Shown piece by piece: positions 52,738 to 60,875 of a DNA stretch of 64,000 nucleotides. The DNA is from Selaginella moellendorffii (Eukaryota > Plantae > Lycopodiophyta). The stretch spans positions 2,027,419 to 2,091,418 of the forward strand of contig NW_003314275.1 of assembly GCF_000143415.4 (NCBI RefSeq), given 5' to 3'. A program made the position numbers and the translations under genes. Positions within the stretch are counted from its first letter, which is position 1. Each line of letters starts with the position of its first letter. The notes under the pieces are model-generated. The model had not been told where the DNA came from. It made no database searches and worked only from the letters and a program-made list of their open reading frames with translations.

Positions 52738-54919
<2,182 letters not shown>

Positions 54920-55068: not shown

Positions 55069-56878
55069 ATGGATCACCCCAGGAAGAATTTCACCCCAGC
55101 GGCCGCATTCGCGGCGTTTGGATTCGCGTGCGTCTCGCTAGGGCTTTATGTCGCGCTGCTTCCTCCGGAATATCTCGATCGCGGCTCTCTCCCTGCGGGA
55201 TTGTGGGCGAGAGCTCCGGATCTCTCTTCCGCGGAGATCCTCTTGCGGCGGGTTGCTGAGAATGGGACGCAGGGATGCCACAACGTATCCACCGCAGCTG
55301 CTGTCTTGTTTGGGATTCCTCGAGCGGAGGATGGAGGCGAGATTACGCTGGCCGCGGATGAAGTTCACAAGTTCTGGATCGTTTCGTATGCTGCCGATGG
55401 ATCCAGGCGATGCTCGGGGGGAGATTTTTACGAGACCGACATCTCAGGTACTTTTCTTCGCGCTTTTCTTTCACAGATTAGAATTTTCAACGCCAAGCTC
55501 TTTTGTTCTTGAGTTTGTTTCCTTCTTGTTTCTCTGGAAGTTGCTTGCTTTCTTTGCTAGCGTTTAGATTCCCGAGTCTCTCATTCCATCTGGTTTGATA
55601 TGGTTTTCCTGATGGTACCTTGTTCCTAGTGTGTGTGATTGCTCTTTCCTTCCATTGATTAAAAATTTCGATTGGTATCAAGCAGGCCCGACTTGGAAAT
55701 CACGTCCACCGGTGACGGACTTGGGAGACGGCTCCTACCTGGTGGAACTCAAAGTCAATGGCGACTTCGCTGGAAGCTACAACTTCACGGTCAGTCTTGT
55801 CTACACGAACTTCCACGGGCTGGATCACCTCCCGGGAAAGTGGGCCTTCAAGAAAGAGATGTTCCGCCTGCTCATCAACTTCACGGCCGGGAGTCGTCGG
55901 CGTAAACACCAGCTCCACACTTGCGCCGCCAGCGACTTAAGATCGACGACTTCACCACCATCCCAATGGCAGGGAAGATGGTCCAGGACCAAATTCAACA
56001 GCTCATGTCAGCTAGACAAGAACGGCCGCTACCTTTGCTTGGATCCGGCCGAGCAGTGCGACGAGAGCCAGTGCTCCGGAGCCATCAACAGCCTGGAGAG
56101 CAACGGCTGGGTCTACTCCGCGCACTGCAAGTTTCGGATCTGGAACTCTGCTGAGGCCTGGCAGTGTCTCGACGGGAAGAAGCTCTTCTTTTGGGGGGAC
56201 TCGAATCACCAGGACACCGTCCGGAACCTCCTCAACTTCGTCCTGGGACACCAGCTGAAATTCGTGGATAGGATCTTCGTCGCCAACTTCACCAATCCAG
56301 CAAACCCGTCGCAGGTGGTCCGGCTGGCCTCGATTTTCAACGGGCACCCGGATCCACATCACAACTTCCTGGGCCTGGGATCGTTGTATGTTCCTCAGTA
56401 CCGCGATTTCGTCCGGTCAGTAGTCCGCCAGGGTGGTATGCCGGACGCAGTGATCCTCAACTCGGGCATCCACGACGGCATGAACTGGAAGACAATGGCG
56501 GAGTTCCTCGAGGCTGCCAGGAACGCGTCCGTGTTTTGGAAGGATTTGCTCGGGGACGAGAGCAAAGCTCGGGTGGTGTTTCGCTCCACGGTTGCTACCG
56601 GCCTCGGGTTTAGAGATCTGGGGTCCAATCCACACAAGATGGAAGCTTTCAATTCCATCCTGGGCGAGGAGCTCGCCAAGGAGCTCGGGGGCTTGGAGCA
56701 CTTCATGTTCGTGGACGACTATGATATCACTTTCCCGTGGCACTATGATTTCTGCTGTAGCGATGGCGCTCACTTTGGACAGCCACCGGCCTTGAAGTAT
56801 TGGTTTGATCGAATTGGACACTTTTACTTTGTGGATCTAATGCTTGTGCATATACTGCTCACTGCGATTTGCTCGTAA
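55069..56878 (+). CDS. NXPE/PC-esterase (SGNH-like) type II membrane protein, putative polysaccharide O-acyltransferase or esterase
   Basis: Exon 1 at about 55069-55448 (N-terminal TM segment, GGDFYETD) and exon 2 at about 55686-56878. Ig/filamin-like DLGDGSY, WGDSNH (GDS) and SDGAH (DxxH) motifs. Confidence 0.75.
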
Positions 56879-57444
56879 AACTATGGTCATCTTTCACTAA
56901 AAGGTTCATAGATAACACTTTTAAGATCCGAGATCAATAAAAATGAGAGATTTTTTGCTCATACTTGCATCTGTGATGAGGTAAATCACGCTTGGAATTC
57001 AAACTTTCCCTTCTTCAAGATGAGCTTGCATTTGTAACCCAAACTCTTCATCACGGCCCGTTTCTTAGCCCTCTTTACCATGGTTTTACTGTGCTGTATT
57101 TTCACAACCTCTAGTAGCACCATGGTGAACGTACACCTCTCACTGAGTAGCTCCAGCGCGGTGACCACGTGGCCTCTCCCCAGCAGCCGCTTGACCACCT
57201 CTTGACTTGACTTTTTGCTGACCATGACTCGCGAGAGCCATGCCGACATCTTTGGGCCCTCACGTAGCATGGCCTCGATACTCTCCGGGAATGCCCATCT
57301 TTCAGATGCGTGGTTGATTTGAAGAGCATCTGGTACGCTTCCTCGGGATTGTCATGCAGATCTAGCACTAGCCGCAAGCATTGTCGTGCTGGAAGCGCCC
57401 GAGCAGTTCAGTCGCATCAACCAGCACGCCAGTGTTGTTCGCCA

Positions 57445-57448
<4 letters not shown>

Positions 57449-57500
<52 letters not shown>
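57449..57500. repeat. Compound (GT)n(GA)n microsatellite
   Basis: Directly visible, about 80 bp upstream of the E3 ligase ATG. Confidence 0.95.
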
Positions 57501-57580
57501 TAGTTTAGGGCACCAGGAAGTTTGAGAGTTTTTAGGGCACCAGGGAAGATTCATGGTTTTAATATTAGATTTTTTAGGGA

Positions 57581-60027
57581 ATGGAGATATGGAGGCTCGA
57601 CGCCGCGGAGCCAATCGTCCAGCAGGTACTAGCGGCACAGCCATGGGAGGCGCTTCAGCGGCGTAAGCTATTCCTCCTCAATCACGTCGATGGCGAGATC
57701 GAGGACGAGGACGGCGACTGCGCCAATGGCTTCATCCTCGCCGATCCAATACCCTCGCCCTACCTCGGATCGCTGTACGCCGGCGCTTGCAGCGGCCGCA
57801 AGCACAAGCGCGAGATCGAGGTCGCCGATCGCCAGCCGGAGCACCAGATTCACGCCAGCGATGCGTGGTTCTGGTGTAATCTCTGCAACAAGGAGGTTTC
57901 TTTGGAATCCCTGGCGCTCGCGAGCTCCTCCGGGTGTTCTTGCCTCTTTTGCCGCGGCTGCCTGGAATCGGTGGTGTCCAGCGCGATCAAGGACGTTCTT
58001 CGCAGGAATCCTCCCCAGGTTTTGGATCCCGGCCCCAGCAGCAAGTCTCAATCGAAATGCCCCAAGCTGATGATCGATCTCACGAAGGATGACGGCGATG
58101 GCGACGACGATTGTAGCATCGTTGGCGAGGTAGCGTCTTCTTCTTCGTTTTCTTCTTTGTGGGACTATCTCCCATGTCCGTCACCATTCTGCCGGGGGAA
58201 GTTCCGGCTTACAGACATCCAGTCCGTCTCTCCGGATTGTTTCGCCCAGTGGGAGGCAGCAGCCAGCGATGCTCTCGTCAAGAACAGTGGCTCCTTCGTC
58301 AAGTGTCCGGGTTGCCAGGTCGTGATCGAGAAAGTCGAGAGTGATTTGCCTCCGGGGCTGGCTCTTTCCGGGGTGCCGGAGTTTGACAGAACGGTTCCTT
58401 TCACCGAGCTCGACGACGATGGCAATCGTCTCTCTCGCCGCGCCATGGTGGACAAGGCCGTGAATCGCTTCCGGTGCGTGGTTTGCAGCATGGACTTTTG
58501 CGCTGCGTGCTTGCAACGCCCCTACCACCTGGGAAAGACTTGCGAGGAGTTCTCGCTCGAGAAGAAGGCTCTGCGGTGCATCTACTGCGATCAAGTGTGT
58601 CGGCACGAGATCAAGTCGCTCGTCGGTGGGAATGATGTTGGGAGTTCTTCGGTGAAGGATATACGAAGTCGGCTTGAGCAGGAAGGGGTGGACAGTGGAT
58701 GGTGCGTGGAGAAAAGTGATCTTGTCGCGGTGGAGAGGCTGTGCGATCGTGTCTGCCAGGAAATGGAGTGTAGGCAACGGTTGAAACAAGCTTGCACGCG
58801 CAACTTACACTGCGGACACCACTGCTGTGGAGTGAGAGGTGAACGAAATTGCCTACCTTGTCTAGAGGTACCTTGTTAGGATTGCCTTGAGTCCTTGTGT
58901 GTTCTTCCTCGGTTTTATGCTTTTGGTGGTGGTGGATGCTTCCTTCTCGACGTTCATTTTTCTTCGTCTTTGTTTCCTTGCTTCGAGTTTTTTGAGCTCC
59001 TGATTTTGTTTTGTGCTGATGTAAACGACTGTTTTTTCTTCGTTTATCTCCTCGTCTCCAGTTTTTCATGAATCTATTTCACTTTCTGTTTTGGCAAAAT
59101 AGTTCACACTCTCTACTTCTTCCTTTACAGGAGGAATGCCAGAAGCAGAAGCTCTCGGGAAAGGCATTGGCGTCTGCTGAGGACTTTTGTGGCATTTGCT
59201 TGGTGGAGGTGCTTCGTTCGGCCCCTTCAATTCTGCTTCAGTGTGGCCACATTGTGCACTTGCATTGTGCCAAGCGACAAATCCAGCAGGGATGTCCTGG
59301 CCCTCAAATTTCATTCGGGTATTTAAAGTGCCCCCAGTGCAAGCTTCTTATGAAGCACAGTAAGCTGGACGCGGACATGCACAAGCATTTGACGACAATG
59401 GACCAGGTAAGCAGCACGCTGGTTTTAAACTTCTTGAAACTCTTTCATTGTTGCCTTTGCAGATCAAAGCCAGAGCAATCAAACGTTTGAAACTGGAAGG
59501 AGTTTATGACAAGCTCAAGGCTAGTTGCAGCTCTGATGACAAACTGACTTCCTTGGCCTTGGAGCAGTACCAGTATTATATGTGCAGCAAGTGCAAGAAC
59601 CCGTACTACGGTGGGAAGCGGAACTGCGGTCCAAACTTGGTGTAAGAGTTTTCTTTGTTTGCGCACTGCATAAGTTCTCAGAGCGTGGATTCTTGACAGG
59701 GAGGACCAAGGACGGCAATACGATCCCTCGGAGCTCGTTTGCGGTGGATGCAGTGCTGGTGCCGATGGCAAGTGCAAGCTTGGTCACGGTAACCAGTTCG
59801 TCGAGTTTAAGTGTCGGTTTTGCTGCTCCATAGCGACGTTTTTCTGCTTTGGAACCATCCACTTCTGTGACAGTTGTCACGGGATCTGGCCTCAGCAGCA
59901 CTCGAGCTCGTACGTGCTTCCTCAGTGCAAAGGGCCCCAACACTGTCCACTGGGAATAGCTCACGCTCCAAACGGTAAGGAGCATTGTTTGGGTTGTTCT
60001 ATGTGTAGAAGCCAAGAGCAGCTATAG
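57581..60027 (+). CDS. E3 ubiquitin ligase: RING1/IBR-like N-terminus plus MYCBP2/PHR-type RING and tandem-cysteine (RCR) C-terminus, 4 exons
   Basis: Exons at about 57581-58867, 59131-59406, 59463-59641 and 59700-60027. Motifs ACTRNLHCGHHCCGVRGERNCLPCL, DFCGICLVEVLRSAPSILLQCGHIVHLHC, GPQISFGYLKCPQC, YYMCSKCKNPYYGGKRNC, YDPSELVCGGC, EFKCRFCCSIATFFCFGTIHFCDSCH, CPLGIAHAPNGKEHCLGCSMCR. Confidence 0.85.
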
Positions 60028-60165
60028 AGCAACAAGCTGAACAGATTTTTCCAAAGACGAAGTTCTTGCTGTTCTTTTGTCTCGTTTATTTATTTTGGAG
60101 TTTACGCACATAGGTAATTTTTTTCTTAAGTATTATCATTTTTAATTTTAATTTTTTTCTTCTGC

Positions 60166-60875
60166 TTAAACTGGTCCTGGTGCTGGCGCTGGTGCTGGTG
60201 CTGGTGGTTTTGCAGGACGAGTGCAACACTCGAGCGTTCCATCATCGTTGGTTGCGAGAGTAGCAATTCCCACGGCTTCCCCAGTGCCATACTTGCAACT
60301 CAGCCTGGTTCCCTCCAACGAGCAGCTGCTTCTTGGATCTGAGGTACACGTCTTGACATTCAGGGAAGCTTTGTCATTCTGTGTACTGTCGACTCTCTTG
60401 CAGGAAGCCAGCAGCATCCCGGTGGTGTCGTTGTAAGACTTAGCAGTGCAACTATCGAGAAATCCACCGCAGGAGCCGGAGCCAGAGCCGTCGCTGGTCC
60501 TGCAACACACCAAGCTTCCATCGTTGTTGCTGGCGTACCTCTCCAGGTCGACGGGGAAGGAATCGTTGTTGGTGCAAGTGAAGATCGCGTTTGGTGCTAG
60601 CGAGGAGGTCCGGAGCTGGCAATCGGCGACTCCACCGCACTTTTCTATGCTCAAGCTCGAGTTGTGCATGGAGCCATTAACCGCTCGGCAGCTCGCTTCT
60701 AGGACTTTGTTTGTGTAGGAGAGGGGTGTACAGCTTCTCAGGAAGCCTCCACATTGATCACAGCTCTACAAAAGAAAAAAAAAAGTCAAGTGTTTTGGAG
60801 TCTCTTTACTATGCTTACCACAAGCACTAATGTGTTGATTACAGCCACCAGCAAGATGCACAGAAGCTTATCCAT
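60166..60875 (-). CDS. CVNH-like secreted protein, copy 7, with Ala-Pro repeat tail
   Basis: Exon 1 at 60819-60875 (MDKLLCILLVAVINTLVLV) and exon 2 at 60166-60765. Ends RPAKPPAPAPAPAPGPV*. Confidence 0.82.

What the first reader, a model, noticed from the sequence alone, without database searches (positions are those of the whole stretch)
57581..60027. Plant E3 ligase fusing an RBR-type RING1-IBR module to a complete RING-Cys-relay (MYCBP2/Highwire/RPM-1) catalytic module
Seen: the spliced C-terminus follows the PHR ligase terminus motif by motif. It has the zinc-binding segment CTRNLHCGHHCCGV..ERNCLPCL, a RING-H2, GPQISFGYLKCPQC, the mediator-loop Cys in GGKRNC, and the downstream site FFCFGTIHFCDSCHGIW. 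Established: in human MYCBP2 the two corresponding cysteines (C4520 in GGEARC, C4572 in FFCFGTTHFC) relay ubiquitin and esterify it to Thr/Ser. The neighbouring Phe and His residues line the substrate pocket; they are conserved here, with Trp in place of the last Phe. Seen: the N-terminus lacks the RCC1/PHR/DOC scaffold. It has a split RING1-like finger (CNLC...CSCLFCRGC...CPSPFC) and an IBR-like finger (CPGC...CVVCSMDFCAACLQRPYHLGKTC). Inference: this is a compact (~680 aa) hybrid in which the RBR RING2 is replaced by an RCR, which would mean possible non-lysine ubiquitination in a land plant. I do not recall this ligase class from angiosperms.
Basis: partly seen in the sequence, partly recalled or inferred. 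Interest (0 to 1): 0.85.

Follow-up and report, generated by a model that had tools for sequence, protein, structure and literature searches.

The report
RBR-fronted RING-Cys-relay ubiquitin ligase gene
This Selaginella gene encodes a small ubiquitin ligase with the first two zinc domains of the RBR class in front of a complete MYCBP2-type RING-Cys-relay unit, and the same layout occurs in seed-free plants and many protists although reviews call this class a single animal protein.

Summary
A four-exon gene (57581-60027, + strand) encodes 689 aa, identical to NCBI's Selaginella moellendorffii LOC9631788.

- **C-terminal half.** Residues 391-685 match mammalian MYCBP2 (BLASTP 1e-66). A family profile hits the RCR crystal structures at 1e-96, and the AlphaFold model matches 5O6C (TM 0.70). 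Both relay cysteines (C576, C630) and the base His641 are kept in 90 of 90 relatives aligned.
- **N-terminal half.** Residues 92-330 are an RBR-type RING1-IBR. The profile hits ARIH2 at 8e-15, HOIL-1 at 1e-11 and HOIP at 7e-11, and the best fold matches are RBR ligases. No RING2 was found.
- **Transcripts.** RNA contigs from four studies join all exons. A second donor 29 nt upstream also occurs, and it shifts the frame before the RCR.
- **Distribution.** This is not a plant invention. An exhaustive search gives 977 cluster representatives at E<=1e-30, and the 150 best listed mostly match across the whole layout. They include mosses, lycophytes, ferns, Chara, Amoebozoa, ciliates, Metamonada, Discoba, Rhizaria and a glaucophyte. 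No seed plant was seen.
- **Prior knowledge.** Databases already label some members "highwire-like" or "RCR-type". I found no paper on them.
- **Limits.** Catalysis is inferred only. The third pocket Phe of MYCBP2 is not conserved, so Thr preference is open.

The scan reached the same reading earlier on another piece of this genome (s1-398961).

The parts
57581..58867 (+). Exon 1 (aa 1-429): N-terminal acidic motif, RING1, IBR and most of the pre-RING zinc module
   Evidence: ORF and splice sites. Identical to P0001. RNA contigs cover 57621-58867.
57677..57754 (+). Streptophyte-conserved acidic motif (aa 33-58, HVDGEIEDEDGD..FILADP). Function unknown.
   Evidence: Conserved in the moss, lycophyte and fern orthologues and absent from the protist members. 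No Pfam hit.
57875..58192 (+). RBR-type RING1 (aa 99-204: C99, C102, C119, C121, C124, C127 ... C199, C204) with a long low-confidence insert between the third and fourth ligand pairs
   Evidence: Profile A3 versus PDB: ARIH2 8.4e-15, HOIL-1 1.3e-11, HOIP 6.9e-11, RNF144A RING1 4.9e-9. VIA-align: RNF144A RING1 Z 9.4. Ligand conservation over 167 relatives.
58304..58543 (+). IBR (aa 242-321: C242, C245 ... C299, C302, C307, C310, H316, C321) with an insert of about 50 aa
   Evidence: All eight ligands are kept in at least 158 of the 167 relatives aligned. The second ARIH2 stretch aligns to the second half of the IBR. HOIP IBR 2ct7 rmsd 2.2 A and RNF216 IBR rmsd 1.8 A. Pfam IBR is above its threshold in relative P0020 and weak here (IBR_1 E 0.0076).
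58577..59139 (+). PHR-type pre-RING zinc module (aa 333-432: C333, C336, C392, C397, C405, C411, H413, C415, C424, C427, C432). It spans intron 1.
   Evidence: Nine of the 11 ligand positions are kept in at least 165 of 167 relatives. H413 is His in 153 and C432 is Cys in 155. C424 is Cys in 131 and His in 35. Also present in the PHR-like protein P0018 and in bat MYCBP2. No solved relative found by profile search.
58643..58750 (+). Helix-loop-helix insert inside the zinc module, mainly in streptophytes (aa ~355-390)
   Evidence: Full-length in the streptophyte rows of A2; P0013 and P0009 carry a partial, differing insert and the other protist rows have none. Predicted as helices with pLDDT above 90. 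Only a weak fold match to the Rho N-terminal helices, Z 3.5. No Pfam hit.
59131..59406 (+). Exon 2 (aa 430-521), holding the RCR RING-H2 (aa 449-499 = 59188-59340)
   Evidence: MYCBP2 5o6c E 1.5e-15. Pfam zf-RING_2 3.7e-6. RNA junctions.
59463..59641 (+). Exon 3 (aa 522-581): linker helices, start of the tandem-cysteine domain, and the mediator loop with upstream relay Cys576 (codon 59625-59627)
   Evidence: Aligns to 5o6c residues 87-144 with C576 on C4520. Cys in 90 of 90 relatives. Intron 2 and 3 junctions seen in 4 of 4 runs.
59700..60027 (+). Exon 4 (aa 581-689 plus stop): rest of the tandem-cysteine domain, with E592, downstream Cys630 (59845-59847), F631, F636, His641 (59878-59880) and W644
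   Evidence: 5o6c E 1e-25. C630 and H641 kept in 90 of 90 relatives. The AF2 model of aa 326-689 matches 5o6c at E 6.7e-21, TM 0.70.
58839..58867 (+). 29-nt segment removed when the alternative 5' splice site 58838|58839 is used. This shifts the frame, with a stop 16 codons into exon 2, before the RCR RING.
   Evidence: Joint 58838>59131 in contigs of X1, X2 and X3. Canonical joint 58867>59131 in X8 and X1. Retained-intron contigs in X1, X2 and X3.
60114..60215 (+). GT-AG intron in the 3' UTR, 87 nt after the stop codon
   Evidence: Contigs X3-13 and X8-15 pass from 60113 to 60216 without a break. GT and AG read.

Best explanation
The locus is an expressed single-copy gene of Selaginella moellendorffii. 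It encodes a 689-aa E3 ubiquitin ligase of an ancient eukaryotic family.

The domain order is RBR-type RING1, IBR, a cysteine-rich pre-RING zinc module shared with PHR proteins, RING-H2, linker helices, then the tandem-cysteine domain.

Shown here: the architecture, its homology to both ligase classes, its transcription as one spliced mRNA, and the conservation of all known RCR catalytic residues.

Inferred mechanism, taken from MYCBP2:
1. The RING-H2 binds an E2~ubiquitin thioester.
2. Ubiquitin is passed to Cys576 on the flexible mediator loop.
3. It is relayed to Cys630 in the tandem-cysteine domain.
4. It is discharged with His641 as general base (oriented by Glu592) onto a substrate nucleophile, plausibly a Ser/Thr hydroxyl.

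The RING1-IBR front replaces the giant RCC1/PHR/DOC scaffold of animal PHR proteins. It most likely serves as a second E2~Ub or ubiquitin docking platform, or as a regulator. That role is a guess.

In plants the gene descends vertically within streptophytes (Chara plus land plants) and seems to have been lost in seed plants.
For: Gene model and identity with the NCBI protein.

RCR homology:
- Exons 2-4 against 5o6c/6t7f.
- Profiles against PDB at 5e-73 and 1.2e-96.
- BLASTP to bat MYCBP2 at 1e-66 over aa 391-685.
- AF2 model with pLDDT 89.9, matching 5o6c at E 6.7e-21 and TM 0.70, with no other significant fold.

Catalytic residues: C576, C630 and H641 are kept in 90 of 90 relatives, and E592 is E or D in 78 of 90.

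RBR front:
- The 80-sequence profile puts only RBR ligases on top.
- AF2 model pLDDT 82.9.
- 49 of the top 50 Foldseek hits are RBR ligases.
- RING1-IBR of RNF216 Z 8.0 and of HOIL-1 Z 7.7.

One transcript: contigs X8-15 and X3-13 span all exons. The Psilotum and Pteridium orthologues are single transcriptome ORFs.

Family: 977 representatives at E<=1e-30, and the best 150 are mostly matched over the whole layout. Named members come from several eukaryotic supergroups.

Tree: land plants form one clade, sister to Chara (SH-aLRT 99), nested in the RBR-fronted group and separated from PHR-type proteins (98).
Against: - There is no biochemistry for any member of this family, so relay and esterification are extrapolated from one animal enzyme.
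- The F4586 pocket position is not conserved (Gln most common, Trp here, Arg in other plants) and F4573 is mostly Trp. Substrate chemistry may therefore differ.
- In 3 of 4 RNA runs the assembled contigs use a donor that shifts the frame ahead of the RCR. Part of the mRNA pool cannot make the full protein.
- The first 40 nt of the CDS, including the ATG, are not covered by any RNA contig.
- 'Loss in seed plants' rests on word-seeded searches with length limits and on a top-150 list without names.
Confidence: 0.8

Rival explanations
1. The protein acts as an ordinary RING (or double-RING) E3 that activates E2~Ub for direct transfer to lysine. On this view the tandem-cysteine domain is only a structural zinc scaffold and no cysteine relay occurs.
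For: Both RING domains look intact. No activity data exist for this family.
Against: Neither relay cysteine is a zinc ligand in MYCBP2 (established knowledge from 5O6C). Even so, both are invariant in 90 of 90 relatives spanning several eukaryotic supergroups, as is the base His. That pattern is hard to explain without catalysis.
Confidence: 0.1
2. In Selaginella the main product is a truncated RING1-IBR protein or an NMD-targeted transcript, because the upstream donor (58838|58839) is preferred. The full RCR ligase would then be made rarely or only under certain conditions.
For: The -29 donor is in the main contig of X3 and in contigs of X2 and X1. The canonical donor appears in X8 and in a minor X1 contig. 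Retained-intron contigs also occur, and a 3' UTR intron lies 87 nt after the stop.
Against: Contigs cannot measure isoform ratios (tool caveat). The downstream exons are intact and about 52% identical to the moss protein over aa 430-689. All orthologues encode the full layout.
Confidence: 0.12
3. The fusion is an annotation or assembly artefact, or the contig is contamination. Exon 1 and exons 2-4 would belong to different genes, or the locus would come from a protist.
For: None beyond the prior that gene models can be chimeric.
Against: Single RNA contigs cross all introns in independent studies. The encoding contig is 2.76 Mb. Orthologues with the same layout exist in eight land plants, including two fern transcriptomes, and in Chara. 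The plant sequences form one clade with Chara.
Confidence: 0.02

Closest known systems
MYCBP2 / Highwire / RPM-1 (PHR proteins), the RING-Cys-relay (RCR) ligase, structures 5O6C and 6T7F
   Same: - The pre-RING zinc segment, RING-H2, linker helices and tandem-cysteine domain are colinear, with 39% identity over 308 aa.
- Both relay cysteines, the base His, the Glu and two of the three pocket Phe positions are kept as aromatic residues.
- The predicted fold matches 5O6C.
   Different: - The protein is 689 aa, against the ~510 kDa of MYCBP2 (PMC9120709).
- It has no detectable RCC1, PHR, DOC/APC10 or B-box domains (Pfam), and an RBR RING1-IBR stands in front instead.
- The F4586 position is not conserved.
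- It falls in a separate, well supported clade from PHR-type sequences.
RBR (RING-between-RING) ligases such as ARIH2, HOIL-1, HOIP, RNF216, RNF144A and Parkin
   Same: RING1 has the C3HC4 pattern (C4C4 in streptophytes) with the long helix and a CP..C last pair, followed by a C6HC IBR. These are the best sequence and fold relatives of aa 92-330.
   Different: No RING2/Rcat domain with its catalytic cysteine was detected. The IBR is followed by the PHR-type zinc module and an RCR unit. No RBR RING2 appears among the profile hits.
HOIL-1 (RBCK1), an RBR ligase that forms ester bonds
   Same: It is a relative of the RING1-IBR part (E 1.3e-11, Z 7.7). It is also a transthiolating E3 that can ubiquitinate hydroxyl groups (PMC6613137).
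   Different: HOIL-1 does this with its RING2 cysteine. Here the candidate ester-forming site is the unrelated tandem-cysteine domain.

Membership tests
RCR (RING-Cys-relay) E3 ligases | RING domain immediately upstream of the relay unit | tested here: met
   Pfam zf-RING_2 at 3.7e-6. Exon 2 aligns to the 5o6c RING at 1.5e-15.
RCR (RING-Cys-relay) E3 ligases | Tandem-cysteine zinc domain with the MYCBP2 fold | tested here: met
   Profile A4 versus 5o6c at 1.2e-96. AF2 model versus 5o6c at E 6.7e-21, TM 0.70, 255 columns.
RCR (RING-Cys-relay) E3 ligases | Upstream relay Cys on the mediator loop (human C4520) | tested here: met
   C576 in GGKRNC aligns to C4520 and is Cys in 90 of 90 relatives.
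RCR (RING-Cys-relay) E3 ligases | Downstream Cys (C4572) with the His4583/Glu4534 catalytic partners | tested here: met
   C630, H641 and E592 align to them. C and H are kept in 90 of 90 relatives, and E or D in 78 of 90.
RCR (RING-Cys-relay) E3 ligases | Threonine pocket of three Phe residues (F4573, F4578, F4586) | tested here: inconclusive
   F631 and F636 are kept. The third position is Trp here, Arg in other plants and Gln in most relatives.
RCR (RING-Cys-relay) E3 ligases | Cys-to-Cys ubiquitin relay and esterification of Thr/Ser in vitro | not testable with these tools
   Needs recombinant protein, E1/E2/Ub and Cys mutants.
RBR ligases | RING1 of the RBR type | tested here: met
   ARIH2 8.4e-15; RNF144A RING1 Z 9.4.
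RBR ligases | IBR (C6HC) after RING1 | tested here: met
   Ligands are conserved. The second half of the ARIH2 IBR aligns. HOIP and RNF216 IBR superpose at rmsd 2.2 and 1.8 A.
RBR ligases | RING2/Rcat domain with the catalytic cysteine | tested here: not met
   The region after the IBR is the PHR-type zinc module. Profiles A3 and A4 give no RING2 hit on the region after the IBR. The RBR fold matches listed by VIA-align mostly end near model residue 240, the end of the IBR. The protein is therefore not an RBR ligase in the strict sense.
[quoted passage not shown] | Giant scaffold with RCC1-like, PHR, DOC/APC10 and B-box domains upstream of the RCR | tested here: not met
   A Pfam scan of exon 1 finds only a weak IBR_1 hit. 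PHR-type relatives such as P0018 do show APC10 and B-box. The tree separates the two groups.

The most novel reading that the evidence does not exclude
The RBR-fronted RCR proteins may be the ancestral form of this ligase class, dating to the last eukaryotic common ancestor, with the animal PHR giants as a derived offshoot.

On this reading the RING1-IBR works as a true RBR front end. It would load E2~ubiquitin onto the mediator-loop cysteine, so that the tandem-cysteine domain plays the part of RING2.

That would make cysteine-relay, hydroxyl-directed ubiquitination a widespread eukaryotic chemistry, present in mosses, lycophytes and ferns and lost in seed plants.
Probability: 0.3. Interest if true: 0.8.

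Novelty: new variant of a known kind. Interest (0 to 1): 0.62.

Why it matters
Reviews describe the RING-Cys-relay mechanism as the property of one animal protein, MYCBP2 ('sole member', PMC9120709; 'first example', PMC9527308).

A compact, soluble-sized relative of about 650 aa, found in nearly every eukaryotic supergroup, would help in several ways:
- It would be a far easier object for biochemistry and structural work than a 510-kDa protein.
- It would allow a test of whether ester-linked ubiquitination is ancient and general.
- It offers a genetic entry point in a tractable plant. Physcomitrium patens has an orthologue, and gene targeting is routine there.

The apparent loss in seed plants would also explain why plant ubiquitin research, centred on Arabidopsis, has not met this class.

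Tried and rejected
- **Pfam on the pieces alone.** Pfam has no model that hit the tandem-cysteine domain, and it gave only a sub-threshold IBR_1 hit for exon 1. It could neither confirm nor refute the reading, so family profiles were needed.
- **SAP/HeH reading of the insert.** I considered this for the insert at aa ~355-390, found mainly in streptophytes. The only support is a Z 3.5 fold match to the Rho N-terminal helices, with no Pfam hit. I left it as a note.
- **The post-IBR zinc module as a degenerate RING2.** No profile or fold hit supports this. The same module sits in PHR proteins, which have no RING1-IBR. Rejected.
- **An upstream 5' exon spliced in at 57622|57623.** This would explain why all RNA contigs end at 57621. 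It is not supported, because the genomic translation upstream of that point still aligns with the orthologue N-termini. Left unexplained.
- **Literature.** Seven searches for a description of non-animal RCR ligases found none. The two primary MYCBP2 papers are not held, so what they say about distribution could not be checked.
- **ESM Atlas look-up.** Added nothing decisive.
Full report
**What is there.**
The + strand from 57581 to 60027 holds an ATG-to-stop gene of four exons: 57581-58867, 59131-59406, 59463-59641 and 59700-60027. Three GT-AG introns of 263, 56 and 58 nt separate them. The 689-aa product is identical to P0001, which NCBI names 'uncharacterized protein LOC9631788 [Selaginella moellendorffii]', encoded on a 2.76-Mb contig. 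The organism is therefore a lycophyte, a land plant but not a seed plant.

**RNA evidence.**
Logan contigs from four runs of four studies were laid on 57300-60300. They skip the introns, so they derive from RNA.
- Introns 2 and 3 are removed in all four runs.
- Single contigs (X8 record 15 and X3 record 13) run through all four exons. This excludes the 'two separate transcripts' alternative.
- Intron 1 has two donors. The canonical junction 58867|59131 appears in the X8 main contig and a minor X1 contig.
- A junction 29 nt upstream, 58838|59131, appears in the X3 main contig and in X2 and X1. It shifts the frame and reaches a stop 16 codons later, before the RCR RING.
- Retained-intron contigs also occur. 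Contigs cannot give isoform ratios.
- All four runs read C where the reference has T at 59641, which would change Val581 to Ala.
- A further GT-AG intron lies in the 3' UTR at 60114-60215.
- Every contig ends at 57621, so the first 40 nt of the CDS are not confirmed by RNA here. The genomic translation across that point still aligns with the orthologue N-termini.

**The C-terminal half is an RCR unit.**
- Exons 2, 3 and 4 hit the MYCBP2 RCR chains 5o6c/6t7f colinearly at E 1.5e-15, 9e-4 and 1e-25.
- Family profiles raise this to 5e-73 and 1.2e-96.
- BLASTP against a bat MYCBP2 C-terminal fragment gives 1e-66 and 39% identity over aa 391-685.
- An AlphaFold2 model of aa 326-689, built on 90 aligned relatives, has pLDDT 89.9 and pTM 0.84. 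It finds only the two RCR structures as significant folds: 5o6c at E 6.7e-21, TM 0.70, 37% identity.
- With chain index plus 4377 as the human numbering, C4520, C4572, H4583, E4534, F4573 and F4578 correspond to C576, C630, H641, E592, F631 and F636.
- In 90 aligned relatives C576, C630 and H641 are invariant, and E592 is E or D in 78.
- The F4586 position is not conserved. It is Trp in Selaginella, Arg in the other plants and Gln in most relatives. A threonine preference therefore cannot be carried over.

**The N-terminal half is an RBR front end.**
Pfam alone gives only a sub-threshold IBR_1 hit. A profile of 80 relatives (A3, aa 92-436) places only RBR ligases at the top of the PDB list:
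- ARIH2 8.4e-15
- HOIL-1 1.3e-11
- HOIP 6.9e-11
- RNF144A RING1 4.9e-9
- RNF216 2.1e-8

The alignments run from RING1 through the connecting helix into both halves of the IBR.

The AlphaFold2 model of this part has pLDDT 82.9, with only the insert inside RING1 disordered. RBR ligases make up 49 of its 50 best Foldseek matches. VIA-align gives RNF144A RING1 Z 9.4, RNF216 RING1-IBR Z 8.0, HOIL-1 Z 7.7, and IBR-only superpositions at 1.8-2.2 A.

Across 167 relatives the RING1 ligands follow the C3HC4 pattern. The fourth ligand is His in 115 relatives and Cys in streptophytes. The IBR C6HC ligands are almost invariant.

No RING2 was found. After the IBR comes a cysteine-rich module (aa 333-432) whose ligands are nearly invariant. 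PHR-type proteins that lack RING1-IBR have the same module (P0018, bat MYCBP2). It has no solved relative by profile search.

**The family.**
A profile of 16 full-length relatives was scored against 1.84 billion cluster representatives. It gave 977 proteins at E<=1e-30 and 2523 at E<=1e-10. The best 150 are all below 1e-111, mostly 430-1100 aa long, and most are matched over nearly the whole layout.

Named plant members:
- Physcomitrium patens ('highwire-like isoform X1') and Ceratodon
- Diphasiastrum
- Psilotum, Pteridium, Adiantum and Ceratopteris
- Chara braunii

Named members outside plants:
- Anaeramoeba
- Balamuthia ('highwire'), Cavenderia ('RCR-type E3 ubiquitin transferase'), Protostelium, Physarum and Rhizomastix
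- Protocruzia and Paramecium
- Platysulcus
- Acrasis
- Cyanophora
- Nonionella

No seed plant appeared in any list. That is suggestive but not proof, because the named searches are word-seeded and length-limited.

A maximum-likelihood tree of the zinc module plus RCR region (68 rows, quick search) shows three things:
- The land plants form one clade.
- Chara braunii is their sister (SH-aLRT 99).
- This group is nested among RBR-fronted proteins and separated from PHR-type sequences (98).

This fits vertical descent in streptophytes and argues against contamination or recent transfer.

**How it most likely works.**
Shown here are the domain order, the homologies, the expression and the conservation of the catalytic residues. 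Inferred from MYCBP2 (PMC9527308 summarises the mechanism) is the following sequence:
1. The RING-H2 binds E2~Ub.
2. Ubiquitin moves to Cys576 on the mediator loop.
3. It is relayed to Cys630.
4. It is discharged with His641/Glu592 onto a nucleophile, plausibly a hydroxyl.

Two non-ligand cysteines and a histidine are invariant across several supergroups, and this is the main argument that the relay is real in this family. The job of RING1-IBR is unknown. A second docking site for E2~Ub or ubiquitin, or an autoregulatory role, are the obvious options.

**Known or new.**
Sequence databases already attach 'highwire-like', 'MYCBP2' or 'RCR-type E3 ubiquitin transferase' to several members, so the C-terminal similarity has been seen by annotation pipelines. 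Seven full-text searches found no paper describing RCR ligases outside animals or this RBR-RCR layout. Reviews call MYCBP2 the 'sole member' or 'first example' of the class. The primary MYCBP2 papers are not held.

I tested it independently here.

I file the finding as a new variant of a known kind. It is a member of the RCR class by every sequence and fold criterion. It is not an RBR ligase in the strict sense, because it has no RING2. It is not a PHR protein, because it has no scaffold domains.

**Surroundings.**
Neighbouring genes show no evident link to this one:
- A CVNH-domain ORF lies on the opposite strand at 60166-60669.
- Poly(A) polymerase exons lie at 52911-53920 on the - strand.
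- A weak NXPE-like ORF lies at 55631-56878.

Noticed in passing
window 58838-59131: An alternative 5' splice site 29 nt upstream of the canonical donor of intron 1 is used in contigs of 3 of 4 RNA runs. It shifts the frame and stops 16 codons later, which leaves RING1-IBR and part of the zinc module without the RCR. Retained-intron contigs also exist.
   Followed up: partly
window 57581-57621: All RNA contigs of four independent runs end exactly at 57621, 40 nt inside the CDS. No contig covers the ATG or anything upstream. The cause is unknown; it could be a branch in the assembly graph, the transcription start, or an upstream exon.
   Followed up: partly
window 59641: The reference has T and all four RNA runs have C at the last base of exon 3 (Val581 to Ala). 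It is probably the other haplotype or a reference error.
   Followed up: no
window 60114-60215 and 60216-60700: A GT-AG intron lies in the 3' UTR, 87 nt after the stop. The spliced contigs then continue for several hundred bases over the oppositely oriented CVNH ORF. This means either a long 3' UTR antisense to the neighbour, or contigs that merge two converging transcripts.
   Followed up: partly
window 60166-60669 (- strand): A 167-aa ORF has a cyanovirin-N homology (CVNH) domain hit (E 9e-5, just under the Pfam cut-off) and a Pro/Ala-rich tail.
   Followed up: partly
window 57437-57509: A compound (GT)n(GA)n microsatellite lies about 70 nt upstream of the start codon. The reads tool skipped it as a repeat.
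   Followed up: no
window 52911-53920 (- strand): Two adjacent ORFs carry the poly(A) polymerase central domain (4.4e-51) and RNA-binding domain (1.5e-9). They are exons of a PAP gene.
   Followed up: partly
P0026, P0034, P0041, P0043, P0276, P0290, P0293, P0299 (relatives): Many protist members of the RBR-RCR family carry extra N-terminal domains, such as C2, PX, RanBP zinc fingers or a ubiquitin-like domain. This hints at membrane- or ubiquitin-directed targeting. The plant proteins have none of these. Instead they have a conserved acidic motif (aa 33-58).
   Followed up: no
window 58643-58750 (aa ~355-390): A helix-loop-helix insert, found mainly in streptophytes, sits inside the pre-RING zinc module and is confidently predicted. 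It has only a weak likeness to the Rho N-terminal / HeH-type helices (Z 3.5).
   Followed up: partly
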